A model generated the notes under the pieces. It was not told the origin of the DNA. It saw nothing but the letters and a program-made list of their open reading frames with translations, and ran no database searches. A stretch of DNA of 63,975 nucleotides, counting the filler, from Salisapilia sapeloensis CBS 127946 (lineage: Eukaryota; Protista; Oomycota), in assembly GCA_023334545.1 (NCBI GenBank). It is 10 parts of 10 records of this genome, joined end to end, with 100 filler letters (N's around TTAATTAATTAA, not from the genome) between each part and the next. Parts side by side here need not be neighbours in the genome. Positions count along the whole stretch, not along the records: positions 24,580 to 41,553 come from JAADVB010000346.1; 9 more parts are not named here. One strand, written 5' to 3'. Shown one piece after another: positions 2,659-40,870 of the stretch. Each line of letters opens with the position of its first letter. The stretch's first letter is position 1. The position numbers and the translations under genes are program-made.

Positions 2659-3624
2659 TTATTCGACTTTACGTGGCTTTCGACCTGGACGTTTCCGGGG
2701 TCGACCTGCCTTTGTTAGTTTCTCTTCTGCTTTCGTATGCTCATCACTCTCATGCTTTGCCTGACGGTCGCGCGTTGACTGACGAGTACTTGCGCGAGAT
2801 GGACGTCTAGACCGAGTACGTGTCGCAGGCGCTTCCTCTTCCTCCGTACTATTCGTTCGAGCTCGTTTTCGCGTCTTGATCGTCTCGGGCGTAGAGTCAC
2901 CAGGGCTTTCGCGTTGGCGCAGACGGGAGGAGACGTTAGGAGACGCTGGATCGTCTGGCGGATGAGCGTTTGAAGGTGATAAGTTGGCTTCTTTCGTGGC
3001 ACATGCACGATGGAGGGTTTCTGTGAGTTGCCTAGCGAAGGTCTGGAGCTCAAGGCCTTTCTGACGTAGCTCAGATTGCTCCGAGTGCGTGATGACGCCT
3101 TGGCAGAAGGAGTAGATGAGCTTGGCGAAGACTTGCCAATCGACTAGCTTTCCCTCTTTCACGTCGGATTCGATAGAATGGAGACTTTGGAGATCAGGTG
3201 TATCGGAGAAACGTGTCGGGTCGACGCCTTTAGACTGTGCAACCTGCACGATCTTGGACATGACGTCGAGCATCATGCTTTGGCGTAGTGTCTTGACGCG
3301 ATCGGATAAGATCGAGTCTTGTCCTTCGTTATCTGTTTTAATATCAACGACAGGTTCTTGTGGATTAGCTTGTGGATCGATGGAGGGAGGGCTCTTGTCT
3401 GTATGAGGCTGACGGAGGGATTGCAATCGCTTAGCAAGCAGCTGGAGATGGCTGGGCACAGGAGGTACTTGGATGTGATCTAGCAAGGAAGCAAATTGGG
3501 AAGGAGGCAACCCAGGTGTCTCTGCTAGGTCGAGTATGTCAGAGTCCTTATTACCGGCCTGTAGCTCCTTGATCTCGTCCTGAACGAAGGCGATGGCGGC
3601 GTCGAGCTGTGCCGCGAGCTGCAT
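2659..3624 (-). CDS. Putative chromatin protein (BRD8-like segment, degenerate bromodomain-like region, C-terminal GRPRK AT-hook-like/basic tail); start uncertain
   Basis: Long ORF taken from MQLAAQ (ATG 3624). ELQAGNKDSDILDL recalls a BRD8 N-terminal segment; PDLQSL..IESDVKEGKLVDWQVFAKLIYSFC is a bromodomain-like helix pattern; ends GRPRKRPGRKPRKVE. A 47-bp intron 3625..3671 could link an upstream exon. Confidence 0.55.
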   Translation of the reverse strand: MQLAAQLDAAIAFVQDEIKELQAGNKDSDILDLAETPGLPPSQFASLLDHIQVPPVPSHLQLLAKRLQSLRQPHTDKSPPSIDPQANPQEPVVDIKTDNEGQDSILSDRVKTLRQSMMLDVMSKIVQVAQSKGVDPTRFSDTPDLQSLHSIESDVKEGKLVDWQVFAKLIYSFCQGVITHSEQSELRQKGLELQTFARQLTETLHRACATKEANLSPSNAHPPDDPASPNVSSRLRQRESPGDSTPETIKTRKRARTNSTEEEEAPATRTRSRRPSRASTRQSTRDRQAKHESDEHTKAEEKLTKAGRPRKRPGRKPRKVE

Positions 3625-4033
3625 CTGATTATAGTGGTGGATTGTCTTGTATGACAAGTGATATGCGGTACTTGTTGCGGTCCAAGACACACGACTGCAA
3701 GGAGCGCGAGGTGTGGGTGATACGAGTGGAAATACGGTCGTGGAGGAGATACCCGATGGAGGGGGAAACAAGACAAGATACTTGTGTCGTGTAGGAGGAA
3801 AGTGGGTGCCGAAGAAGACACAAGGGTAGATGGAGGGTCCTGGAGAACGGACCGGCACTTTTTTCGATGCGATATAGAAATTTATCCAATGAAAAGATGG
3901 TAGAATGCTTTTCCACCAATCGTGCGTTTCAGAATGGTTCATTATTTTACTATTTTTACTTGGTGGTCTATTTAAATGGTGCTACAATAAGACGACATGA
4001 CGATCCTCCTGACTTGGGCAGACTCGGATCGCG

Positions 4034-5312
4034 ATGGGACTATGGACCCACCTCCGCGTCGCTGCTAAGCGCACGGCATTTACTCAACAGGTCTTTCCAA
4101 ACCATGCTTTCAAGTATTCGACCGTCACTCGGTCGATGCAAGAAGCATTCAGTGAAACGTCTTTGAAAACGCCTCTGTCGGTGCGTAATACCGCCCAAGA
4201 CGATGGTCGACTCGCACTGGAGCTCCCTCTTCCTGGTATCGAAGGCCTCAGTTCCATCAGCCTCTCGAATGATGCAGATACTGTCCAAGAACTCATTCAG
4301 GCCCTTGAAAAACGTGACGAATCGCTCAAATCAATCGACGTGACCACGACGTCCGGGACGAAGATCGCTCGCAGCGTTCATATCCATGAGCTTACGGCCA
4401 TGAACTTTGTCTTACGTCTCAATCACTTTAATGTACTCGTCGAGAATGGTACGCGCATGCTCATTCGCACGAATTACCGACGTTTTAATGTAAAAGTAGA
4501 GCAAGGACATGATTACGTTCGTACTCGAGCGGAAGGCAATGCGTTTGCTGCCATTAAGCACAAGATCGAGAGCTACCCGCATCCTCATGTACGTCTCTCT
4601 ATCGCTTCTAGCTATATGCATACTTATGTAGTTGTAGCTGTCGGTACAAGAGTACTACAAGATGTGTCTCCATGCTGGTGCAGAACAAACGGTCGCGGAC
4701 AAATGGCTACGTGAATTACAACGTCGTAATCTTCTCCTTCACTTTGACCGGAGTCCGAATGAAGAGCTCCAGTCGACGTTGATCCTGCGTCCGTACAGTG
4801 ACGAAAGCTTACAGACGCTTCGAAAGGCCATGGACTCGGAGCTGTACGACATCCAGCTCCAGCGCAAGCGCAAGGAGACGCAATTACATGAGTTAAAACT
4901 CAACTTGAAGAAGGCAGTGGCAGTTGATGAAGATTTACGTCGAGCAGCTTTGCGGCTGCCGAATGCCGGGAAATGGGTGTCAGGAATAGCTGTTACATCT
5001 ATCTACGGATCTCTCATGTATCTCGTCTGGGACGTGTATTCATGGGATGTGATGGAACCTGTAACGTACTTCATCGGCTTCACGGGTGTCATCGGGAATG
5101 CCGTGTATCATACGATGACCAAGAAGGATCCGACGTATACGAATATGTGGCAAAAGAACTTTCGCGTGCGCTTGGATAAACTCCGGAAGGAGCACAAGTT
5201 CGCGCCGGAAAAGCTCGAAGAATTGCAGACACAAATGGAACGTGTGGAACAGGACTTGGAGATCTTGTACCAATGGGAAGGGGAGTCCAGGAGTAGCATG
5301 ACACCGAGTTAA
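4034..5312 (+). CDS. MCU: Mitochondrial calcium uniporter; join(4034..4448,4500..4588,4638..5312)
   Basis: Presequence-like N-terminus, coiled coil, two hydrophobic helices flanking WDVMEPVTYF (WDxxEP pore motif); GT-AG introns 4449..4499 and 4589..4637 restore frame. Confidence 0.9.
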
Positions 5313-24580: not shown

Positions 24581-26115
24581 AGCAATGTCGCTCTCGATGA
24601 GCATGTCGACGCTCTTATGAGTGTCGACACTGGCCTCGCATCGGCAGACACAACATTGCAGGCAGCGAAAGACACGTCCGAGCTGGATGGATACAACCAG
24701 AGCCTCCCACAACTCAGTGATCTCTTCCCCGACGAGGACAGTGGCGTCAACGATGATCCTTACTTGGATGATCTTATTGACCTCGGACTCCACTCCACAG
24801 CTGAGTCAGTGTTTCCTCTTTTTGCCGACCAGGAACTCGACGCAGCAAATGATCTCGTTAACGACATTAACAACTCAAAGGAAGGAAATGAAATGCCAGT
24901 GCATATGGAACCGGACCAGTACAGAATAGAAAACACAGACCGACCTGTCGAAGTGGATGACAATGTATATCCGAGCACTCTTCCCATCCATTGTACCTCT
25001 GATAACACGTCTGGAGAAGAAGAGGAACCGTCTGAAAACCCACAAGAGCTATCACAAGAGCTGTTGAACAGGACAGAAACACAAGAAGACTCTTTGATCC
25101 ATGGCGCAACTCCTTTAAAACGACGTCGGGAAACGAGTACCGCAGATGATCCACAGCGACATGAACAGAAGCTCTTGCATCACCTCGTGTCCAAGCAACA
25201 GGTGTATCTGGACAACTTTCGAGCCATGCTGTCCCTCGCACCAGTCAACGATGTTGTACGTATGCCTAATGGACAGTCTGTGGTGGCATGTATTAATCTT
25301 CCACGTAGAGAATGGCGTTAATGACACCGATCGAGAGCTACATCCACTTGGGCAAAGACTTTAATCAGCGTCGAGAACAGATATTAGCGATGCGTGAAGA
25401 AAAGTTAGACACGACACGCAAGTATATTGAAGAGAAGGCGAAAGGACTAGATGTGAATCAGCCACATGCGTACTCGGACATGTTTGAACGGTTTGGAAAA
25501 GTGTATTGTGTCAACTTTGCTATCTCCAAGTATGAGGACGTGACGTTAGCCGAGGTTGGTCGAGCCATTTATGATCAGGTGACTGGGTCCGACACGACTT
25601 TAAGCGACGCCATGGGCTGTCTAAGTGTCCGTGAGTCGTACGACAAGATCAACTGTCGCTTCATGCACCAACGGATCGTGACGAAACTCAAGGTCGACCA
25701 TGTGATCACACCAGATATGGAGTCAAACGCTGTTCTATTTGCGACACAAGGAGACGATCAAATGGTTTTAGCAACAGACTATATTGATCATGACGAGCTG
25801 TATCCATACAAGACGAAGGATCATATTCGAAAAGATACATCCAGTGGGTACGTTTCCTTTGCTCTTGAAAAAAAAGGTAAAGGCTGATGATCTGACTTGT
25901 GGGATAGAGTCGTCTTGACACGGCAGGTTGATGCCGACGGACGCGAATCAATCATCATGAAACGGTTTTTAATGACCAAGTTCCACTTGCATACGCACCA
26001 ATTGACGGACGACCAGCATCAATTGCTCTTGTCTCGGATGCCGATTTACGCAGAAACGATGCGAGAGCAACTTACGACGCGGCTGCGACAAGAAAATAGG
26101 GATGTTTCGAGGTAG
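24581..26115 (+). CDS. M96 mating-specific-like family protein (5' possibly truncated); introns 25256..25308 and 25848..25907
   Basis: Frame open from the spacer; PIESYIHLGKDFNQRREQILAMREEKLD, MESNAVLF, DYIDHDELYPY, IRKD motifs shared with 38354..39631 and 39797..40870. Confidence 0.7.
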
Positions 26116-26611: not shown

Positions 26612-27781
26612 ATGAGCACGCAAGAGCAAGTGCTACGTACGGGCGTCTTATTCAAAAAAGGCTCTGGCATGGGTCCGTTCGGCCGAAAGAACTGGAAGCC
26701 ACGGTACTTTGTCTTGACGCCAACACGCCTTCAGTACTATACGTTTGAGAACGGTGAACTCAAGGGTGAAGTCACCCTCCAAGGGTGCGATGAAAGCGTC
26801 ATCGAAGTCATGCCTGCTGATAGCATGAAGACTGGGAGCTCGGCTAGTACCATTTGGCGCATCGCCGTCAATGCTCCTTCCCGTCGCTTCCTCGTCGCGG
26901 CGGCCACCGAGATGGAAATGAACGACTGGGTCGACAAACTCGTCCTTGCATTCCGTATTAATAGTGGTCAGGCTCGACCATCGGCCGTATCCAAGCAGCC
27001 TTCGCAGTCACCTCCCCACTCGTACAGCAGTGACGAGCAACCACGGTCCAATGCTGGTATCACGGACTTTCAAAACTTTACTCACTCATCTCGACGCGCA
27101 GGCAATCACCGCTCGAGTGATGAAGAAGGCTGGGTCTCGTCTCCACACACGCAGATGAATCAGCAGGAAGCGGAGAGACGTCGACAGCAGGAAGAAGAGG
27201 AGGAACAGAGGAGACTGGAAGAGATCGAACGACAGCGTCAGGAGCAACGGGCGGAAGAAGAGAGACAACGTCAGGAGCAGGAGGAGGAAGAACGACAGCG
27301 TCAGGAGCAATGGGCGGAAGAGGAACGACAGCGACAGGAAGAGGAGGACGAGAGGCAGAGAGCGGAGGAAAGTGAACGGCAGGAACAGGAGGAGATGGAG
27401 CGCAAGAGGCTGGAAGCACAGCTTTTAGAGGACGAAGAGCAGAGACGAGAGGAGCAGTTGGCTCGACAGAGACGACTGAAGAAGGAGAAGCATGATCGAG
27501 AGCGACAGGAACGAGTGGCGGAAGAAGAGAGGCGAGCACAGGAGATGCTGCAGCAACAGTTTGACGAAAGTAGTGAGGACGAAGTGCCTCGATCGTCTTT
27601 GATTGATGACGCCAAGCGAGATGCAATGCGGAAGAAGCAGGCGACGCATGCACAGCGTCGGGAAGCAGCGTTGGAAGAGCAGAAGACATCCGATGGGATG
27701 CAGCATCTGCATATTGCGCCGGAACAGAGAGAAGTGGAAATTGTGCGCCGTGCACCTTCGGAGAGGGAGGTTGCGCTGTAA
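26612..27781 (+). CDS. PH-domain protein with E/R/Q-rich helical region
   Basis: RTGVLFKKGS..NWKPRYFVL..LQYY..AATEMEMNDWVDKL PH signature; ERQRQEQ repeats downstream. Confidence 0.85.
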   Translation: MSTQEQVLRTGVLFKKGSGMGPFGRKNWKPRYFVLTPTRLQYYTFENGELKGEVTLQGCDESVIEVMPADSMKTGSSASTIWRIAVNAPSRRFLVAAATEMEMNDWVDKLVLAFRINSGQARPSAVSKQPSQSPPHSYSSDEQPRSNAGITDFQNFTHSSRRAGNHRSSDEEGWVSSPHTQMNQQEAERRRQQEEEEEQRRLEEIERQRQEQRAEEERQRQEQEEEERQRQEQWAEEERQRQEEEDERQRAEESERQEQEEMERKRLEAQLLEDEEQRREEQLARQRRLKKEKHDRERQERVAEEERRAQEMLQQQFDESSEDEVPRSSLIDDAKRDAMRKKQATHAQRREAALEEQKTSDGMQHLHIAPEQREVEIVRRAPSEREVAL

Positions 27782-29968: not shown

Positions 29969-32899
29969 GGGTTCAAATAGAGTACTTGCCTGCTCGTTTG
30001 ATATTGACACGAAGATGCACTGCTAATGCTTTTGGTGGAGACAATACGGTGGGAATTGCTACTTGCATGCTTTAGATACCACCCTTCTGTCGCGTTTGGA
30101 ATGCATTGGACCAGGTATGGCAACGTACCTCGGACAGAAAAGCGAGCAATGTAGTTGAACGCTCGGTGGGCTGTGATAGCCCGAACGTATTATTATTCTG
30201 TGTCTGCTTCGATGTCACATGAGTAAGTGGGGTCGGCCAAATGCATCACAATCGGTGCTCAAATGACTCATGTCGATGGATCTAAATGCTAAGCACACAA
30301 AATCACAGCATATTTGCCAATTGACGCGTTTCTGCTCCTTAATTGCAGCTGTCTTTGTAACTTCCAAGGGAATATGATGGAGTCCCACCCTCGAGCTACT
30401 AGTAACGTAGCTCGCGCTGTAATCAGACTGTTTGAAATGCGTTCCCCCGAATAATTTGCGTTTTGTATACTGCGATCAACGAAATGGCGGGATATGTCAA
30501 AGGACAAAAGATGTATCTGTAACCGACGTTGACCCATGTTTTCTAGACCGATGGCTTTATTCCTCAGCAGTCGAGTAGCCATGATTTATATTGTGCCATT
30601 GGAGACTGTCAAGTTCGTGGATTGGACGATACACTCGGAACAAATCGTTGTGTGGGTGCTAATATACATAAAAGGTGGATCTGTTGCTATCAAGCGTCAA
30701 TGTTGAGCTAGGAAGCAATAAACTTTTTTAATCACAAAATACAGACTCTACTGCTGTGCCCACACATTATAAGTATATATGAATATATACAGAACATTGC
30801 GCAATGCAGGTCGATCGGATATTGGTATTGCGGGCACTTAAGAGCTATGTGCTCGACAGCTAGTCGTAACTTTAATCCTTCAGTCTTTACTGATTAGCGT
30901 GTAGTACATTTGGTATACTCTGACACACTTAAAATGCGTAGCACGCTCAAAGCTTTAGCATCGAGTAAATTAAGAAGATAGAGTTATCGGTAATCTAGAC
31001 ACAAGTACATCTCGATTTTCCCCTTTGAAAGGGTTTAAGATTTGATTAAAACGCTTTGATCTCATACTTCGTAGACAAACCATATTTGTCTTTTTCCAAC
31101 TAAGTATACATCTTAGATGCCGTCTATCTTGCACATCTACTACATGAACTATTTGTTTGCTGCGCGGATCATGAAATTGGAAATACCCGATACTAACACG
31201 TACAGTCGTGAGATTTGATGTTGATATATCTTAATGAGTGTGCAGGTAAAAGGTCAATGTACACTTTAGATCTTTTTCTCTATTATCGGAAGCTTTGCTT
31301 GAGTTGGGTTGTTTCATCGGATATCTCGGCAGCTTAGACATTTCTGGTGAGAATGAGCTGTCCTTTTATCTTTCTAAGTCGTTGTTTAGACACATGTAGG
31401 ATATTAATAGAAACGGCTCTTTGTGTATGCTGTACTTGACCATAAATATCCCATCGCTGAGCTGATATACTTTCGCCTCACACTCTAGGATTCTTTGGTA
31501 CACATCTTGCTTAGAGCTTACCATACTTGCATCGAGGCTCAGGTGTATATTTTGTAAATTTGATTCTGAATGTGTAGCCTCGGCTAGCTTCGTTTTTATG
31601 AACTTACCTCTACATGCTTTGGAACTGCATAATCAAACGCCTGTGTGGACTGATGCGCCTTAGAACGCATGGCAAAATTGTATTTGTTTACATTATAGCA
31701 AGATCTCTACCGGATAAAAAGTGGCATGATTGTCCAACTGACTATCTTCATGGCGCATTTATAAAACTAGAGGATAAACACTATAGCGACCATGATGTAC
31801 AATACTAACGCGTAATAGACGAGTAATGAAAACCCGAAGGTACTGCTCGAGTGCTTCACGAATGCGTACCAATTTATCGCTATCTTCAGATCGTAGACTG
31901 AGCAGTGATTTAACTTCAATTGGACAAGCTAGCCGAACTTCGTCGTTGCTATGTTGTGCGTTGTTGCGCTAGAAGTCATCAGTTTCAAATGCGTTGCGTC
32001 TGCACAATTTCCCAAAGAAAGCAGTTTGCAGTATAAAAGTTGTGGAAACAAACTATGAATCAATAATCCCTTTCTACCAATCTTGTAGATCCTGGTGATC
32101 GAACTATTTAGCTCATAAATCATGTCGCAATAAATGGCTTGAAATCGAGCGCTTTGGAAGCATAACAAGCATACGAGTAGCATTTGATAGCCTAGAACAA
32201 AGCCCAAGTGGTGCGATAGATCGAAACGGAGTTTCCACCTTAAACCATTGCAGTAAAGAATAGCTCCTATGGAAACATTTATGATATATTTTATCAAGTG
32301 TAGCGAAAGCTTTGCTATATCACTTTTATGTCGCCATCTTCAACTGGGGTGTCTGGCCGCTTGAAACATTCGAATCGAATACCCTTGCGGATCCTGTCGC
32401 CAATAAGCGAAGAACACGTTGGTGGTAGGATTTATGTTCAAGACGAATTTTGACATTCATAGGATTAATGTGCTAGGTAGCTATGCACGACTATAAAAGC
32501 TTTTAAATTAAAAAGCTGAAGTCAGATAATCCGGAAACCTTGTTGGAACTATCTTGAGGTGGGTTTTGTGGTACCGAAGATGTATTGCGCCGTCCCTCAA
32601 AACAAGCTCATTCGATGTCGGAAATTTTCCATCTGTATCAGCGAATCTGTCAGTATACTTCATCCAAGTACTTTCAGAACTGCAGGTAGTCAGGCGGTAG
32701 GGGGTAAGATGCTCTGGCCAGGATTGAAGATAGGTTCCTTGAAGTTATTCTGTCAACATACAAAGCACCAGGTAAAAATAAATACTGTGAAACTTCTTTA
32801 GAAGATGATATAAGACGATCCTTTACGATACAAACCCATAATTTACGAGAGCGCTGGTATCATATAATCTAAAAGTTCGGTAATTGTACGGGAACCCAA

Positions 32900-34183
32900 A
32901 TGGGCGCAATCGAGGTACTTTTTGCTTGGAAGAGTTCGGACGCCGCTATCGGTGGGATGGCGGAGTTCCAGTCGCGAAAAAGACAAGAGAGAGCGCTCCC
33001 GGTCGAAATGCAATACCCGTTCAATGTCGCTGTCGACTTTACGCAGTTACAGGTAGAGTTATGCTTGGATCATGATCATGCGTCATAGCCATGCCAGTCT
33101 GATTCCCCCTTTGCTACGACACAGCCAACAGCATTGCGACGTTACTTGGCCTACTACAATTTGGAAGCACCGCCTGGTGGTTCCCAGGAAGACCTTGCCG
33201 TCACGGTTGCCCGGTATACTTATTTGATATGGAATGTCCTACCGTCGCTAAAGCATTGTATAGTCACTTTAACAACGAATGCCAACGCACTGATGAAGAG
33301 TCTAGCATCGGTTACTTTATCTCTTACGTACGTGATCCAGATCTGCCCAGTGTATCATCTACTAACGCGAATCTACAGTTACGAGCATCCCAAGGAGATG
33401 TAGAAACTTCTCATGACATCGTGACTCGACTACAGCAACGAACAGAGGTACAACCGATCCATTGGAGTTCAGATATTGACAATGCATCCGTGGAAGAAGA
33501 ACCGACCATTCGGCATGAACTGGACGAAGCGATACGTCGACATCAAGTGGAAGAATTGGAGCATAGTAAACGCAAGAGACTGGAAGACGAAGACGACGAT
33601 TCGAAGGACTCGAAACGTAAGAAGCGTCGTCCGAGATTGTACTGCGTTTGTCATGGACACAGCTTTGGCGCTATGATTGCGTGCGACAACAAAAAGTGTC
33701 AAGATCGATCGAATTGGTACCACATGACATGCGTCAACCTGGATCCGTCGGAACCACCTCCAGACACTTGGTACTGCCCATCCTGCCAGCGTCACGATGA
33801 CGTGGATATCCCAGAGAATCGTACAATCTCTTTCCATACCACCATCTAGTTTGCATGCATCATCTATGGCATAGAGTATCGGAAACCCGTGGCAAGTGTT
33901 ACCTACGGCGACATGATTTCCCATGCGTTGGCCGTGTTGCCGGAAGGAAAGGTATCGTATCTTGCTCTGACTATACCACCAGCATCTAAGCACCGCCTAG
34001 GCAACGTTCAAGGAAATCTGTGATTTCGTCGAACAAGAGTATGAAAGTCAACTGAATTGGAAATTGGAGAGTGATCAGCGCAAGTCTCCCGTGTGGAAGT
34101 CGAGCGTTCGAAAGATTCTCTTCTCGAACGTCCGCTTCCGGAAACACCCCGAAGGCAAAGGTCTCTTCTGCCTTGCAGCTTAA
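32900..34183 (+). CDS. SAP30 Sin3-binding-like + ING-type PHD finger + forkhead-like winged-helix protein; predicted join(32900..33052,33125..33213,33264..33327,33379..33820,33875..33951,34001..34183)
   Basis: VDFTQLQ|PTALRRYLAYYNL..DLAVTVAR|HF..ESSIGYFISY (SAP30 C-terminal pattern); LYCVCHGHSFGAMIACDN..WYHMTCV..WYCPSC (PHD); last exons KPVASVTYGDMISHALAVLPEGK|ATFKEICDFV..VWKSSVRKILFSNVRF. All introns GT-AG, 49-72 bp; alternative start ATG 32957. Confidence 0.75.
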
Positions 34184-34250: not shown

Positions 34251-34760
34251 CTACTGCGCTTTCGGGTCCAAGTCCGGCATATCTTCATCGTCGCTGTCGC
34301 CTTGACCACCCATCATACCGGCCTGTTGCGCAGCCATCATCTGCTGAATGTCGAAGCCTTCTCCGCCACCGAGAGCGCTCATATCAAAGCCAGGCTGCTC
34401 CTCCTCTTCGTCTTCATCCACATACTTGTTCCAGTCGACGCTGACGTTGGTTTTCTCCAAGTGCTTGTCAGCCAAGAGACGCGGCCAGAACTCCCCCTCT
34501 GTGTCCTTCTTCTTGATGTAGAAGTGGAGATTACGCTCCTTCTTTGCCCACTTGCTCTCGGCGTTCTCGGCGTCCACTTGCGCATAAAATTCGAGCTTGA
34601 CTTCATACTGCTTGCCATTGCTCTCGCCTGCGAACGTCAAGAGTTTGTCCGTAAGCGACACCTTCTCGTTCTTCACGTCCGGCAAGTCGATCGTCACATA
34701 CAATGCGTCTTTACGCTGCGCCCACTTAATAGGCGCCCATAATGTCTTCTCTTCGCTCAT
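34251..34760 (-). CDS. PTGES3: Hsp90 co-chaperone p23 (CS domain)
   Basis: WAPIKWAQRKDALYVTI, FWPRLL, VSVDWNKYVDEDEE, acidic GGM tail ending DDEDMPDL. Confidence 0.93.
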   Translation of the reverse strand: MSEEKTLWAPIKWAQRKDALYVTIDLPDVKNEKVSLTDKLLTFAGESNGKQYEVKLEFYAQVDAENAESKWAKKERNLHFYIKKKDTEGEFWPRLLADKHLEKTNVSVDWNKYVDEDEEEEQPGFDMSALGGGEGFDIQQMMAAQQAGMMGGQGDSDDEDMPDLDPKAQ

Positions 34761-35745: not shown

Positions 35746-36789
35746 CTACTGAGTATTCCACAGATCTTTTAAACTAAATCCATCCGGCAGACTTTCAATG
35801 GCGAGTCCGAGCTCGTTCGAGTAGACTGGTGGTCGGTCCTGGTTCTTGTCGATGGCAGCATAATACGCTGCAAAGGCGTCTAACGATCCAGTATGACTCT
35901 CTTCAATCTCGACATCGTCGATACGACGAGGCTGCTTTACCACTTCTATCGGCTGTGGTGTCTCCTCCATTTCGTACTCGACACCGTAGACTGGATTGTT
36001 GTAAAAGATTTCATGCAGCTTCTGTATTTCCTGAAACAATTCATGTAGTCTCTCTTCCGGATCCACTCGGAAACCTAGGATGTAGCCACCACTTTGCGAA
36101 GTCGTCTCCAACACCAGTGCTGGCCCGAACTTGGACGAACGGACTCGACCACGACAAATTTGCATGTACGGAATGCTGACGTTAAAATTCTCAGCTAACG
36201 TCGCATGCCACACAACACGCACGTTGGTGATGAAGAACGTACCGAGGTTACCTTGGTCGGACGCTAGATTCCAGACACCTTGTAGTCTCGTGTATACTTG
36301 CTCTTTCGGTAGTAGAGCTAGCTGCTTTTCTTTCACAATGGCACCACGAAGCTTTAGATCTCTATATAGTTTGGATGTTTCGTAGGCACGAAAGACAGCT
36401 TGGACAGTCGTGAATAGACGAGGACTCTGCTTGACGAGACTTGTGAAAATGAACTCGAATCGACTTTCTCCAAACTTGGTTAAAAGGAATAGCGCTTGCG
36501 TCATACCTCCACTCAGTTTGGATGTCGCTGTTCGGATTTTGATATTTAAAATGCAATTGTACCCGATCGTCAAATTCGTTCGAAGAGATTTATGGGATGC
36601 CCACATAATACGTAGGTTGGTAATTTCGAGTGACCCTCGCTCTCCGTTATTCCCTTTCGTGTCTTCCACCGAGTTAATAGCGTCAATCATTTTTTCACCA
36701 GGACGAAGCTCCAACGCAGATCCGGGTACATCGAATCGAATTTCCCGGTCTTGCCACGTAGCACCATTGCGCGATGCTTCGAGCTCCAT
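35746..36789 (-). CDS. BBS5: Bardet-Biedl syndrome 5 protein (BBSome)
   Basis: [43 protein letters not shown]-like [60 protein letters not shown]. Confidence 0.97.
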
Positions 36790-36901: not shown

Positions 36902-38308
36902 ATGAGTATGCTGCGAGTGAGGGGAAGTGTATCGTGGGCTGTGTACGGCGCGACAGCCGCTGCTGCTGCAACTGCAGTCGCTGTAGCAGGTAGTCGTCGA
37001 TTCCTATCCACTGCTCCACGCATGAAATCCATCCATCGACGTGTCCCGGCGGTGAAGGGAGATCTCCTTTCGGCTGTCGAAACGCCTTGTCTTCTTGTCG
37101 ATTTGGATGCGATGGAGCGTAACTTGAAGGCTTTACCGAAATCTTTAGGCGACAACCTCGGTCGAGTTGTTATCCGTCCTCACGCGAAAGCACACAAATG
37201 TGCTGCGTTGGCCAAACATCAAGTCGAGCTGTCCAAAGTATCTATATTTACAAATCATCACACCTTCCTTGGATTCACATGCTTGTAGGCTATCGGACTG
37301 TGTTGCCAAAAGGTATGTGAGGCAGAAGCGATGTTTGCTGGTGGTGTCAAGGACCTCTTCCTCAGTAACGAGATCATTTCGTTTGAACGGTACGAGCGCA
37401 TGGCTAAGCTGGCGCAACAAGGGGCGACCATCACGCTTGTATTTGACAACACGCTCGCCATTGACCAAGCCGACTCAGTCGCACGAGACTACAATGTCAA
37501 GTTCCAGAGCCTCGTGGAGATAAACGTCGGTCAGGATCGCTGTGGCGTTGACACGCCGGAGGAAGCTGTCCACTTGGCCAAGATCATCCAGAATGAATGT
37601 GACAATTTGCAATTACGTGGTATCCAGGCGTACCATGGTGCGGCACAGCACATTCGTTCGTACGTGGAAAAGTCGCAGGTCATTGATAGCGTGGCACAGA
37701 AGGCGCAAGCCGTAAAAACAGCTTTTGAAAGAGAAAATCTCGTGTGTGACGTCGTTACAGGCGGCGGGACCGGAACATACCCATTGGAAGTAGCTAGTGG
37801 CGTGTTCACTGAAATCCAGCCTGGCTCCTACCTCTTTAATGACGCTGACTATAGCAAAAACCTTGCTCCAGACGGACACTTTGGTACTTTATTCTCTATT
37901 ACGCATGTAGTCTCCTACTGATTTGAGCAACTAGTTCGAGACTGGGAGCAGAGTTTGTTCGTTATGACGTCTGTCATGAGTGTGAATGAAAAGGCTGGTA
38001 GAGCCGTCGTGGATGCTGGCACCAAAGCTGTGTCGCTCGACTCTGGTCCGCCTATCGTCTACTCTACGCTGGATGCCACGCCTCTCCTCCCGCTTGAGTA
38101 CAAGGGTGGAGGCGACGAGCACGGCATCCTCACTCCAGTTAACGCGACTGCGTCCATGAGCCTTCCGATGCCTCAGCTTGGCCAGAAGCTACTCCTGACA
38201 CCAGGCCACTGCGATCCGACGGCCAACATGTACGATTTTATCGTCGGCTATCGGAACAATCATGTAGAAGACGTGTGGGAACTAAATGGTCGTGGTCCTG
38301 GCAACTAA
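36902..38308 (+). CDS. Fold-type III PLP enzyme, D-threonine aldolase / D-serine dehydratase family; join(36902..37237,37289..37883,37935..38308)
   Basis: ETPCLLVDLDAMERN, RPHAKAHK (PLP Lys), CCQKVCEAE, DRCGV, QAYHG, TGGGTGT, EIQPGSYLFND, DAGTKA, DEHG, PGHCDPTAN; presequence-like N-terminus. Confidence 0.9.
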
Positions 38309-38353: not shown

Positions 38354-39631
38354 TTACACGACAACGTCGTTGTATAACCACTTGTACATTTCTGCTAGCA
38401 ACGCTTCTCCCCATCGTCCAATGTGCTTCGTGATACCTCTCCATGCGGCAGGAGAGATGGCAAAGTCCGGTCGATGGAGCGTACAATGCGACCATCTCTT
38501 CAAGACGACCACAAGCTCCTGTCCGTCTTTCGTCGGACGATAGTACGAGCTAAAGTCAAAGACGACATTGATGTCTCGACGTATTCGCTGATGCGTTTGG
38601 TACGGATACAGCTCATCTTGGTCGACGAACTCGACGAGAATGATCCCGTGCTGCTTGTCGCCCTCCATCTTGTTGTCATGGGCCGTGAAGATCGGAAGAG
38701 TGATCGTATTGCTTTCCACGTCGACACCAAAGTGCGTCTTGATCACTAGTTTGCTTTGCCACAATTCATCGTCGCCACTATCATCATCTTCACGAATCGT
38801 CAAGGCGCCCATGGCTTCCGACATGGAGATCTCCATATTTCGTAAGAGGTACACGAGGACGTCATACACTTGTCGAACGCTCGAAACATTGACAAAGTGT
38901 CGGACACTACAGCGAGATGCGTGAAAGTTACCAGACGGACCTTCATACCGATGTTCTTCTCGAAACCGGCGATGTGGATTAAGGAACGTATATCGTTGTC
39001 GAAGGAATTTCTTCGCTGCTTTTAATTTCGCATCCCGACAGCTAAAGAGATATTGCCGTCGTTGCTCTGGATTACTCCCGAGCGAAAAGTACATTTGCGC
39101 TGGGATGCACTCTTGGAGACTCTACAAGTGATGGTCAGCACAACAAAGTGATGGTCAGTGAGGGAGATGTACCATGTAGTGGGAGAACCAGCCTTGGTAC
39201 TGCGCAAGGCGTAGTCGTTGTCGATCTACTGCATCCTGTAGCCTCTGTGTCTCCTGTTTACACTCTGTAAAGCTCCTCGTATCCTGTCTTCTCGTTGCTT
39301 TCGTACGCAGCTGCACTAGTTGCTGCTCCAACTCGGCTGCTTCCTCCTTTAAATGAGCAATTTCTTCCTATCTCGTGCATTTTAGTAAAACGCACGACGA
39401 GATACTAGCCATCGAAAATACCTTGCGGATTGTATGGGTGGCCTTGCGTTTTCGACGAACACGCTTCGGTTTCGCCACCGGCGCCGAGGCGACAATAGAC
39501 GTGTCGTCCGGACTGCCCGTGCTACAGTCTGAAGATGCTGTGTGGTCTGCATGGGGATGGTAGAGCATGGAGCTCCAGGACCTTGGATGCTCATACGCCT
39601 GCTCCGTTACAGTGACGCTATTGGCTACCAT
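38354..39631 (-). CDS. M96 mating-specific-like family protein; exons 39422..39631, 39173..39367, 38354..39121
   Basis: Basic KRVRRKRKATHTIRK|EE then coiled coil; LTIREDDD, VESNTI, EFVDQDELYPY, RIRRD, VVLKRW. Confidence 0.8.
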
Positions 39632-39796: not shown

Positions 39797-40870
39797 TTAA
39801 AGCTCTCGAATGATCTTTGGCAGCACATCACCCCAGCCTTCTAAACTATCCGTTAGTTCATGCCACGAATCGTTCGTGATACAGAATTGTGGTCGATGGA
39901 TCTTGGCGAAAGACCAACGCTTAATGACGACGCCTCCATCCGGTGAAGATGCGACCTGCACGAACATAGTGTTGTCACGCCGGACACGTTCGTGTGGGAG
40001 GTACGGGTGTGCATCATCAAAGTTGACAAAATCCGCCGTCACTACGCCATCCTGACGTGTCTCTGAAAAATCGGAAAAAGCGACGGTATTCGACTCCATT
40101 GGAGGTGTGCCTTTGCCTAGTGTCGTGACCAAACGGTTTTGCATTGTACCGGGTGTGTTGCTGTCATCATCCTCTCGGATCGTCAAGCTACCTAGTCGCT
40201 CGGAGATGTTGATCTCGATGTTGGAAAAGTAGTACACGAGGGCATCAAACACTCGTCGGACACCTGGAGCGTCTGGAAACGGCAGAATGCGACATGCTTC
40301 CGAGACGTAGTCTCCGTCGATGGTTTCATAGCCTTTGCGTTCAAAATAAACTCGTGTCGGATCTAAAGCGCCTAATCTAGTCTGCATGAACTCTCTTGCT
40401 AGCGGAATTTTCTGTCCACGAAGCAGGTCGAGTGCGATCCGACGTTCATCTGGGTCGGACTTGAGGTGAATAAAGTGTTGGACAGGGCTTACATTTCGAT
40501 TCATGGCAGAAACCGAGAGCTGGATGTACCCGCCTAATATAGCAAAGTGGTTCGACAGCAATGTATCTTCCAATGCTCGTTTTGTCGTCTCTTTTTCTTG
40601 CAACGTCTTGCCTGGTGTCGAGTACGGACGTACGAGTCGTCGAGCTAAAGCTGCTCGTTTCAACTCCATTTGTTCCACTTGCCTCATCAACCGCTCCTTT
40701 TCCTCCTACATTGCAACGTTAGAAGATACTGTCGTAGGAGCTCGTACGAATTGTCTGGACCGTACTCGTCGAATGGTGTCCGTGGCCTTGCGTTTGCGAT
40801 GGCGATTACAAGAGCCTTCCTCCGCGAGAGAAGAATCTACTTCATCCTCATCAGAGCTGTCTCTTTCCAT
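39797..40870 (-). CDS. M96 mating-specific-like family protein; exons 40766..40870, 39797..40705
   Basis: RHRKRKATDTIRR|EEK; SPVQHFIHLKSDPDERR, LTIREDDD, MESNTV, RVRRD, VVIKRW; tandem with previous paralogue. Confidence 0.8.

What the first reader, a model, noticed from the sequence alone, without database searches (positions are those of the whole stretch)
32900..34183. Apparent SAP30 / ING-type PHD / forkhead-like winged-helix fusion, hidden by splicing
Seen: six exons joined by canonical small introns. The N-terminus follows the SAP30 Sin3-binding pattern, the middle is an ING-like PHD finger, and two terminal exons absent from the ORF track read KPVASVTYGDMISHALAVLPEGKATFKEICDFVEQEY..VWKSSVRKILFSNVRFRKHP. 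Established: forkhead domains follow KPPYSY..LI..AI...P....TL.EIY.FI...WQNSIRHNLS.N.CF.K and are characterised mainly in animals and fungi; SAP30 and ING are separate subunits of Sin3/Rpd3L HDAC complexes. Inference: one polypeptide combining Sin3 recruitment, H3K4me reading and DNA binding, a compact repressor architecture I do not recognise from model organisms. The winged helix could instead be a non-forkhead type.
Basis: partly seen in the sequence, partly recalled or inferred. Interest (0 to 1): 0.75.

Follow-up and report, generated by a model that had tools for sequence, protein, structure and literature searches.

The report
SAP30–PHD–forkhead-like chromatin gene
This is a real spliced oomycete gene whose single protein joins a Sin3-deacetylase docking motif, an ING-type reader of methylated histone H3 and an unusual forkhead-type winged helix; the layout is shared across stramenopiles, and no paper I could find describes it.

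The parts
32900..33052 (+). Exon 1: start codon (first ATG after the stop at 32870), N-terminal tail, and the first 9 profile positions of the SAP30 Sin3-binding region (VDFTQLQ, 33026-33052)
33053..33124 (+). Intron 1, 72 nt, GT..AG, with an in-frame stop at 33086-33088. Same position as in Pythium oligandrum.
33125..33213 (+). Exon 2: core of the SAP30 Sin3-binding region (ALRRYLAYY...). Ends in a split Arg codon.
   Evidence: PF13867, 24.7 bits, cut-off 22.2; family HMM positions 10-38, E 4.9e-13
33214..33263 (+). Intron 2, 50 nt, GT..AG. Same position as in Pythium oligandrum.
33264..33820 (+). Exon 3: end of the SAP30 region (33265-33312), a poorly conserved acidic/basic linker, and the PHD finger
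33568..33636 (+). Two basic clusters (KRKR ... KRKKRRPR) just upstream of the PHD finger. Looks like a bipartite nuclear localisation signal. Read from the sequence only.
   Evidence: The equivalent K/R run is present in all orthologues.
33634..33801 (+). ING-type PHD finger. Residues matching the ING2 H3K4me3 pocket (Tyr, Ser, Met, Trp) are conserved.
   Evidence: PF00628, 26.9 bits; ING2 2.3e-15, 20 best PDB hits all ING family; 109 bits
33821..33874 (+). Intron 3, 54 nt, GT..AG, phase 1, with an in-frame stop at 33847-33849. Its position after '..IPEN' is conserved throughout oomycetes.
33875..33951 (+). Exon 4: N-terminal arm and helix 1 of the forkhead-type winged helix
   Evidence: (family HMM positions 2-26, E 9.5e-12)
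33952..34000 (+). Intron 4, 49 nt, GT..AG, phase 0. Its position after '..GK' is conserved in Phytophthora, Pythium and Achlya.
34001..34183 (+). Exon 5: strand 1, helix 2, long loop, helix 3 (..VWKSSVRKIL..), strand 2, wing 1, strand 3, and the stop codon at 34181-34183. There is no wing 2.
   Evidence: PF00250, 18.5 bits on this exon alone; HMM positions 27-86, E 1.1e-41; for the fold of the 93%-identical orthologue domain

Best explanation
The gene encodes a nuclear subunit or adaptor of the Sin3-Rpd3-type histone deacetylase complex, with three modules in a fixed order.
1. The N-terminal SAP30-type region docks the protein on Sin3. In the solved SAP30-Sin3A complex the partner is the PAH3 domain.
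2. The ING-type PHD finger binds histone H3 trimethylated at Lys4.
3. The C-terminal forkhead-type winged helix, which is basic on helix 3 and wing 1, contacts DNA or nucleosomal DNA. It would do so with a specificity different from the classical forkhead site, because the base-reading Asn and His are replaced by Ser and Lys.

Together these would bring the deacetylase to H3K4me3-marked chromatin. In animals and yeast the same job is split between SAP30, an ING protein (ING1/2, Pho23) and separate DNA-binding recruiters.

Shown here: the gene structure, the three domains, their order, the fold, and conservation across stramenopiles.
Inferred: binding to Sin3, to H3K4me3 and to DNA, and a repressive outcome.
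For: Gene model:
-.
- Introns at the same four positions in Pythium oligandrum, and the same convergent CS-domain neighbour.

One polypeptide:
- P0045 is a single ORF and P0174 a complete transcript, each with all three domains.

SAP30 region:
- Pfam 24.7 bits on exon 2 alone and 40-50 bits in orthologues.
- The only PDB hit is the SAP30 SID of 2LD7.

PHD finger:
- The 20 best PDB hits are all ING/Yng/Pho23/Png2, led by ING2 at 2.3e-15.

Winged helix:
- Profile against PDB gives FOXO3 at 6.1e-5. All better hits are Fox proteins, and histone H5 comes at 0.015.
- Canonical forkhead proteins are found at E 1e-5 to 1e-3 in a library of 1.8 billion.
- AlphaFold model pLDDT 90, pTM 0.79, built from a family alignment that holds no canonical Fox sequence.
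- The top 50 Foldseek PDB hits are all Fox domains.

Functional logic:
- In the same SAP30-...-winged-helix frame, brown algae, Chrysoparadoxa, Nannochloropsis and many environmental sequences carry an SGF29 tandem Tudor instead of the PHD finger.
- From established knowledge, SGF29 Tudor is the other classical H3K4me2/3 reader. The conserved property of that slot is therefore H3K4me reading.
- Also from established knowledge, ING1/2 reach Sin3 through SAP30. The fusion therefore joins known partners.
Against: - No RNA evidence for this organism.
- No experiment on any member of the family was found.
- Pfam Forkhead scores of orthologues are 24-29 bits against a cut-off of 27.
- The forkhead base-contact Asn and His are not conserved, and wing 2 is absent. 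DNA binding is therefore not assured.
- Public records name orthologues 'YNG2', 'png1' or 'ING family', which would point to acetyltransferase complexes. Those names appear to rest on the PHD finger alone.
- Presence of Sin3 and Rpd3 in this genome was not checked.
Confidence: 0.6

Rival explanations
1. Same protein and complex, but the winged helix is not a sequence-reading DNA domain. It would act like a linker-histone globular domain, gripping nucleosomal or linker DNA without sequence preference, or as a protein-protein module inside the complex.
For: - The forkhead base-reading Asn and His are replaced.
- Wing 2 is missing.
- The family profile also picks up a multi-H1 protein.
Against: - Helix 3 and the loop before it (LNWK.ES..RK.PVWKSSVRKIL) are almost invariant from oomycetes to brown algae. 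That is more typical of a surface recognising one defined ligand than of unspecific DNA grip.
- Fox domains outrank H1/H5 in every search.
Confidence: 0.25
2. A classical forkhead transcription factor that binds the canonical forkhead site (RYAAAYA) and happens to carry co-repressor docking and reader modules.
For: - Forkhead fold and homology.
- From established knowledge, forkhead factors such as FOXK and Fkh1/2 are known to work with Sin3 complexes. PMC7897486 appeared, but I did not read it.
Against: - The Asn and His of the helix-3 motif (..N-S-I-R-H..) are Ser or Ala and Lys in every family member aligned. From established knowledge of Fox-DNA structures, these residues make the base contacts.
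- Wing 2 is absent.
Confidence: 0.08
3. The protein is an ING/Yng2-type subunit of a histone acetyltransferase complex (NuA4/HBO1-like), as several database names suggest, not a deacetylase subunit.
For: - Names given by sources: 'Chromatin modification-related protein YNG2', 'png1', 'ING family'.
- Yng2 is among the best PDB hits of the PHD finger.
Against: - No ING N-terminal domain is found by Pfam in the window exons or in any orthologue. From established knowledge, that domain anchors ING proteins in their complexes.
- A SAP30 Sin3-binding region stands in its place at 40-50 bits.
- Sister forms replace the PHD finger by a Tudor domain but keep the SAP30 region.
Confidence: 0.05
4. Gene-model artefact: the last two exons belong to another gene, or the mRNA normally ends at the stop in intron 3 (33847-33849), so no winged helix is made.
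For: - No RNA data for this organism.
- Public annotations with a retained last intron exist: P0008 'variant 3' of Phytophthora nicotianae, and P0005.
Against: - Colinear orthologues in about 30 oomycete species.
- The winged-helix exons are the most conserved part of the gene, 93% identical to Pythium.
- Profile coordinates are seamless across the junctions.
- An intronless orthologue and a complete transcript carry all three domains.
- Only 68 nt separate the stop codon from the convergent neighbour, leaving no room for another gene.
Confidence: 0.02

Closest known systems
SAP30 / yeast Sap30 (Sin3-HDAC subunit)
   Same: The Sin3-binding region (Pfam PF13867) is present and well conserved. 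The orthologue's region aligns to the SAP30 SID solved with Sin3A PAH3, 2LD7.
   Different: The region is N-terminal here, not C-terminal. No SAP30 zinc finger was reported by Pfam. It is followed by a histone reader and a winged helix, which SAP30 lacks.
ING1/ING2, Pho23, Png2 (ING-family H3K4me3 readers of Sin3/Rpd3L complexes)
   Same: The PHD finger is of the ING type: ING2 at 2.3e-15, and Pho23 and Png2 of solved Rpd3L/Clr6 complexes are among the hits. The pocket residues Tyr, Ser, Met and Trp are conserved.
   Different: No ING N-terminal domain. From established knowledge, ING1/2 reach Sin3 through SAP30. Here the SAP30 docking piece is fused directly, which makes that adaptor domain unnecessary.
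Forkhead (Fox) domains, FOXO nearest
   Same: Same fold and detectable sequence homology. The loop between helix 2 and helix 3 is long, as in FOXO.
   Different: - The base-contact Asn and His of helix 3 are replaced by Ser/Ala and Lys.
- The protein ends two to four residues after strand 3, so there is no wing 2.
- Pfam scores sit at the cut-off.
- It occurs in stramenopiles, whereas PMC3493443 states that FKH proteins were identified only in opisthokonts.
- It is always C-terminal to a SAP30 region.
SGF29 (SAGA/ATAC tandem-Tudor H3K4me3 reader)
   Same: In the sister architecture of brown algae, Chrysoparadoxa and Nannochloropsis, an SGF29_Tudor domain (62-97 bits) fills the slot that the PHD finger fills here.
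   Different: The window's protein has no Tudor domain. In those relatives the Tudor is flanked by a SAP30 region and a winged helix rather than the SGF29 coiled coil. The database names 'SGF29' and 'SAGA-associated factor 29' for them are probably misleading.
PHD-winged-helix cassettes of ASH2L and Polycomb-like proteins (PHF1/MTF2/PHF19)
   Different: They score below the true Fox domains. The PHD and winged helix there are packed together, whereas here they are about 10 residues apart and on separate exons. Their complexes are different (COMPASS, PRC2). No sequence homology was detected.

Membership tests
SAP30 family (Sin3-binding region, PF13867) | Match to the SAP30_Sin3_bdg profile above Pfam's gathering score | tested here: met
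   Exon 2 alone scores 24.7 bits against 22.2. Orthologues score 40-50 bits. 27 of 37 long family members match. The family HMM runs seamlessly over exons 1-3.
SAP30 family (Sin3-binding region, PF13867) | N-terminal SAP30-type zinc finger, as in animal SAP30/SAP30L | tested here: not met
   No such Pfam family was reported for the window exons or for orthologues at E up to 0.1.
SAP30 family (Sin3-binding region, PF13867) | Physical binding to Sin3 (PAH3) | not testable with these tools
   Homology to the SID of 2LD7 only.
ING family | C-terminal ING-type PHD finger with the H3K4me3 pocket residues | tested here: met
   The 20 best PDB hits are all ING/Yng/Pho23/Png2. The alignment to ING2 keeps the Tyr, Ser, Met and Trp positions.
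ING family | N-terminal ING domain (PF12998) | tested here: not met
   Not reported by Pfam in the window exons or in any orthologue.
Forkhead (Fox) domain, PF00250 | Match to the Forkhead profile above Pfam's gathering score (27 bits) | tested here: inconclusive
   - Exon 5 alone scores 18.5 bits.
- Orthologues score 24.0-28.0 bits, and relatives up to 29.3.
- 18 of 37 members match at E up to 0.001, best 9.1e-9.
- The joined window domain was not scanned.
Forkhead (Fox) domain, PF00250 | Reciprocal sequence similarity to canonical Fox proteins | tested here: met
   The family profile finds FOXO3 at 6.1e-5, then 17 further Fox entries before histone H5. Canonical forkhead proteins are found in the 1.8-billion library.
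Forkhead (Fox) domain, PF00250 | Forkhead fold: H1-S1-H2-H3-S2-wing 1-S3 | tested here: met
Forkhead (Fox) domain, PF00250 | Helix-3 base-contact residues Asn and His (..N-S-I-R-H..) | tested here: not met
   They are aligned to Ser and Lys (..S-S-V-R-K..). Lys is at least 90% conserved, and Asn is never seen at the first position in the family members listed.
Forkhead (Fox) domain, PF00250 | Wing 2 after strand 3 | tested here: not met
   The protein ends 2 residues after strand 3. Pfam matches stop at profile position 67-68 of 88.
Linker histone H1/H5 globular domain | Best sequence and structure matches are linker histones | tested here: not met

The most novel reading that the evidence does not exclude
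The stramenopile SAP30-reader-winged-helix family preserves an early, chromatin-complex-bound form of the forkhead domain. On this reading the forkhead fold served as a built-in DNA or nucleosome anchor of Sin3-HDAC complexes, with its own invariant recognition helix (Ser/Arg/Lys instead of Asn/Arg/His), and is not an opisthokont invention. Its fixed frame with exchangeable H3K4me3 readers (PHD or SGF29 Tudor) would then be a self-targeting deacetylase adaptor with a DNA specificity not yet described. My data do not exclude the alternative of an ancient transfer of a FOXO-like domain into stramenopiles.
Probability: 0.2. Interest if true: 0.8.

Novelty: new variant of a known kind. Interest (0 to 1): 0.55.

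Why it matters
- **A natural fusion of known partners.** In yeast and animals three jobs are done by separate interacting proteins: SAP30 docks on Sin3, an ING protein reads H3K4me3, and a DNA-binding recruiter finds the site. Here all three sit on one chain. Such fusions are strong evidence that the parts work together.
- **A natural swap experiment.** Some lineages carry a PHD finger and others an SGF29 Tudor in the same slot. This says that what is selected there is H3K4me reading.
- **Forkhead outside opisthokonts.** A clearly forkhead-type domain is found throughout stramenopiles, in a non-transcription-factor context and with a different, invariant recognition helix. This bears on where Fox factors came from.
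- **A practical entry point.** Oomycetes include major crop and animal pathogens, and diatoms and brown algae are ecologically dominant. The protein is a small, conserved, single-copy-looking way into how deacetylases are aimed in these organisms.
- **Annotation.** Many orthologues are truncated at the two small introns inside the winged helix or misnamed YNG2 or SGF29, so the family is largely hidden.

Tried and rejected
- **Single-sequence AlphaFold** of P0004:205-359 failed, pLDDT 40, and was discarded. The second job used a 52-row alignment.
- **Taxon names.** Names were obtained for only some relatives. The rest are environmental, so a range beyond stramenopiles is neither shown nor excluded. 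The assembly that holds P0045 (GCA_014466275.1) could not be assigned to a species.
- **Which reader came first.** The winged-helix tree was too poorly resolved at its base to say whether PHD or Tudor is ancestral.
- **Literature.** Nine searches found no description of the architecture. Iyer et al. 2008, which may mention early forkhead origins, is not held.
- **ESM Atlas feature search.** It gave only a weak NFRKB winged-helix lead (score 0.77), which I rejected in favour of the consistent Fox matches.
- **Rejected readings.** Gene-model artefact, H1/H5 membership and ING or Yng2 membership; reasons are under rival explanations and the membership tests.
- **Joined protein not searched.** Exons were searched one by one by reference, and the fold was predicted for the orthologous domain of P0004.

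Full report
**1. What is in the sequence**

Between 32900 and 34183 on the + strand there is a compact spliced gene. I read five coding exons:
- 32900-33052
- 33125-33213
- 33264-33820
- 33875-33951
- 34001-34183

The four introns are 72, 50, 54 and 49 nt, all GT..AG. Exon lengths sum to 1059 nt, or 353 codons with the stop.

Exon 3 is one open frame of 557 nt, and nothing requires a further intron. The Pythium oligandrum orthologue does have a fifth intron in the variable linker.

**2. Are the junctions real?**

The junctions rest on comparative evidence, which is strong.

- *Colinear orthologues.* A word search with the long ORF of exon 3 found full-length oomycete proteins of 308-359 residues. 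tblastn of three of them against the window is colinear over all five exons. The gaps are exactly 24 and 18 residues over introns 1 and 3, and the last exon is 92-95% identical.
- *Seamless profile coordinates.* Family HMMs built from the orthologues hit the window exon by exon. The SAP30 region gives positions 1-9, 10-38 and 40-55 on exons 1, 2 and 3. The winged helix gives positions 2-26 and 27-86 on exons 4 and 5, with E 9.5e-12 and 1.1e-41. The missing positions are the split codons.
- *Conserved intron positions.* In the genomic locus of the Pythium oligandrum orthologue (L002), introns lie at the same four places, and the same CS-domain gene follows convergently.
- *Faulty public models mark the same introns.* Several truncated or read-through gene models break at exactly these two introns. 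Some end '..PEN|R..' (P0009, P0012, P0016). Others continue '..GK|VRG..' (P0005, P0008). The Achlya model reads through both.
- *One polypeptide elsewhere.* P0045 is encoded by a single uninterrupted 1176-nt ORF (L001). P0174 is a complete MMETSP transcript. Each carries all three domains.

The reading in which the last exons belong to another gene is therefore excluded for practical purposes. Only 68 nt separate the stop at 34181-34183 from the stop of the convergent p23-like gene.

**3. The three domains**

*SAP30 region.* Exon 2 alone passes Pfam's threshold for SAP30_Sin3_bdg (24.7 against 22.2 bits), and orthologues score 40-50 bits. The only PDB sequence hit of the orthologue's region is the SAP30 Sin3-interaction domain solved with Sin3A PAH3 (2LD7, E 1.4e-4). 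No SAP30 zinc finger is reported.

*PHD finger.* It scores 26.9 bits in Pfam. Against PDB sequences the 20 best hits are all ING-family fingers: ING2 at 2.3e-15, then Yng2, ING1, ING4, Png2, ING5, ING3, Yng1 and Pho23. Other PHD classes (TAF3, BPTF, PHF2) follow only from 1e-5. The aligned Tyr, Ser, Met and Trp are the residues that, from established knowledge of the ING2-H3K4me3 structure, form the methyl-lysine pocket. No ING N-terminal domain is present.

*Winged helix, by sequence.*
- Exon 5 alone gives Forkhead at 18.5 bits, E 0.0022.
- Complete orthologues give 24-28 bits against a cut-off of 27, and relatives up to 29.3.
- A profile of 11 family members finds FOXO3 at 6.1e-5, followed by 17 further Fox entries before histone H5 at 0.015.
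- The same profile, run against 1.84 billion representatives, finds canonical forkhead proteins at E 1e-5 to 1e-3. Pfam confirms them as Forkhead at 88-492 bits.

*Winged helix, by structure.* The window's domain is split by an intron and I was not to join exons. I therefore folded the orthologous domain P0004:274-359, which is 93% identical over exon 5. The alignment had 52 family rows and no canonical Fox sequence.
- The model has pLDDT 90 and pTM 0.79, with the order H1-S1-H2-H3-S2-wing-S3.
- The 50 best Foldseek PDB hits are all Fox domains, TM 0.57-0.72.
- The ESM Atlas's own model of P0004 has Fox clusters as its structural neighbours.

**4. How it departs from a classical forkhead**

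- In the alignments to FOXO3 and Fkh1, the helix-3 motif W-K-N-S-I-R-H-N-L-S corresponds to W-K-S-S-V-R-K-I-L-F. From established knowledge of Fox-DNA structures, the Asn and His read the bases. Here they are Ser and Lys.
- Across the 52-row family alignment the Lys is at least 90% conserved. The first position is Ser or Ala, never Asn, in the members listed.
- The protein ends two residues after strand 3, so wing 2 is absent. Pfam matches stop at profile position 67-68 of 88.
- Helix 3 and the wing are strongly basic, as read. The stretch from the loop through helix 3 is nearly invariant from oomycetes to brown algae.

I conclude that this is a homologue of the forkhead domain with the forkhead fold. 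It probably still binds nucleic acid. There is no reason to expect the classical forkhead site.

**5. The wider family**

The profile search gave 132 representatives at E up to 0.001, and 76 at up to 1e-10.

*Taxa.* Every named source is a stramenopile:
- Many oomycetes: Phytophthora, Peronospora, Plasmopara, Pythium, Globisporangium, Lagenidium, Aphanomyces, Saprolegnia and Achlya.
- The brown algae Pylaiella and Ectocarpus, plus Chrysoparadoxa and Nannochloropsis/Microchloropsis.
- A cluster with a Stephanopyxis (diatom) member, and MMETSP transcripts.

Many others are environmental and unnamed, so a wider range is not excluded.

*Layout.* The domain order is always SAP30 region, then an optional reader, then a C-terminal winged helix. 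Among 37 longer members:
- 27 match SAP30_Sin3_bdg
- 18 match Forkhead
- 13 match PHD
- 12 match SGF29_Tudor

Pylaiella (P0055), Nannochloropsis (P0178) and others have an SGF29 tandem Tudor of 62-97 bits exactly where the oomycete protein has the PHD finger. A third group has the SAP30 region and the winged helix only. The domain tree is unresolved at its base, so I cannot say which reader came first.

**6. Mechanism**

From established knowledge:
- SAP30 binds Sin3.
- ING1/2 and Pho23 bring H3K4me3 recognition to Sin3/Rpd3L complexes.
- ING1/2 do so through SAP30.
- SGF29's tandem Tudor is another H3K4me2/3 reader.

A protein that carries the SAP30 docking piece, one of two alternative H3K4me readers and a basic winged helix is best read as a Sin3-HDAC adaptor. 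It would bind H3K4me3 nucleosomes and adjacent DNA with one chain.

The gene structure, the domains, their order, the fold and the conservation are shown. Binding to Sin3, to H3K4me3 and to DNA, and a repressive effect, are inferred. I put this at 0.6. The main rival, at 0.25, keeps the complex but sees the winged helix as an unspecific nucleosome grip like H1/H5, or as a protein-contact module.

The database names YNG2, png1, 'ING family' and 'SGF29/SAGA-associated factor 29' seem to follow the reader domain alone and are probably misleading.

**7. Novelty**

Orthologues are in public databases with the three Pfam labels precomputed, so the gene is not unseen. Nine full-text searches found no paper that describes the architecture or a forkhead-type domain in oomycetes or other stramenopiles.

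One paper states that FKH proteins have been identified only in opisthokonts (PMC3493443). A preprint reports that Iyer et al. 2008 placed forkhead among families present in or soon after the last eukaryotic common ancestor (10.1101/2024.09.24.614687). I could not read Iyer et al..

I rate it a new variant of known kinds: known domains, a new and conserved arrangement, and an atypical forkhead.

**8. Organism and limits**

The winged helix carries the signature of peronosporalean and pythialean oomycetes rather than of Saprolegniales. The variable parts are only 37-40% identical to both Phytophthora and Pythium. The window therefore comes from an oomycete not closely related to the annotated ones. 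This is inference, and the species was not identified.

The joined spliced protein of the window was never handed to any search or folding tool.

Noticed in passing
window 34254-34760 (-): A p23/Sba1-like co-chaperone gene (CS domain, 30.6 bits) lies convergent to the finding's gene. The two stop codons are only 68 nt apart, so the 3' UTRs must abut or overlap. The same neighbour, in the same orientation, is found in Pythium oligandrum (L002 4205-4793).
   Followed up: partly
window 25312-25884 (+), 38357-39094 (-), 39800-40690 (-): Three paralogous ORFs of 191-297 residues have no Pfam match. They share motifs such as '..G.L(S/T)(I/V)RE..' and '..(L)YPY....R(I/V)R(R/K)D..'. They may be a lineage-specific gene family clustered in this piece.
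   Followed up: no
window 35749-36789 (-); 26612-27778 (+); 37331-37918 (+): Other neighbours: BBS5, a ciliary BBSome subunit (484 bits); a PH-domain protein with a long Glu/Arg/Gln-rich tail; and part of an alanine-racemase-N-type (D-serine dehydratase-like) gene.
   Followed up: partly
P0008 and P0005 (Phytophthora nicotianae 'variant 3', P. oleae); equivalent to window 33952-34000: Public isoform or gene models retain the last intron and end after helix 1 of the winged helix ('..GK|VRG..'). This is either a real isoform lacking the winged helix or an annotation error. In the window, retaining this intron would stop at 34021-34023.
   Followed up: no
P0009, P0012, P0014, P0016, P0044 and others: Many public orthologue models are truncated at, or read through, the two small introns inside the winged helix. 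The forkhead label is therefore missing from many database entries, and the family is under-recognised.
   Followed up: partly
P0055 (Pylaiella), P0178 (Nannochloropsis gaditana EWM22464.1), P0054 (Chrysoparadoxa), P0058, P0069: A sister architecture runs SAP30 region, then SGF29 tandem Tudor, then forkhead-type winged helix. These proteins are named 'SGF29 tudor-like domain protein' or 'SAGA-associated factor 29' in databases, which probably assigns them to the wrong complex.
   Followed up: partly
P0056 (1153 aa), P0137 (1017 aa), P0151 (605 aa), P0153 (746 aa): Among the weaker hits are proteins with eight, five and three tandem canonical forkhead domains (P0137 also has C2H2 fingers) and one with seven linker-histone domains. 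These multi-winged-helix architectures come from unnamed sources.
   Followed up: no
L001 (GCA_014466275.1, JACKZZ010002351.1) 3001-4176: The most divergent PHD-type orthologue found (P0045, 391 aa) is intronless and has a long Ala/Lys/Gly/Asn-rich linker. I could not identify the organism of this assembly.
   Followed up: no
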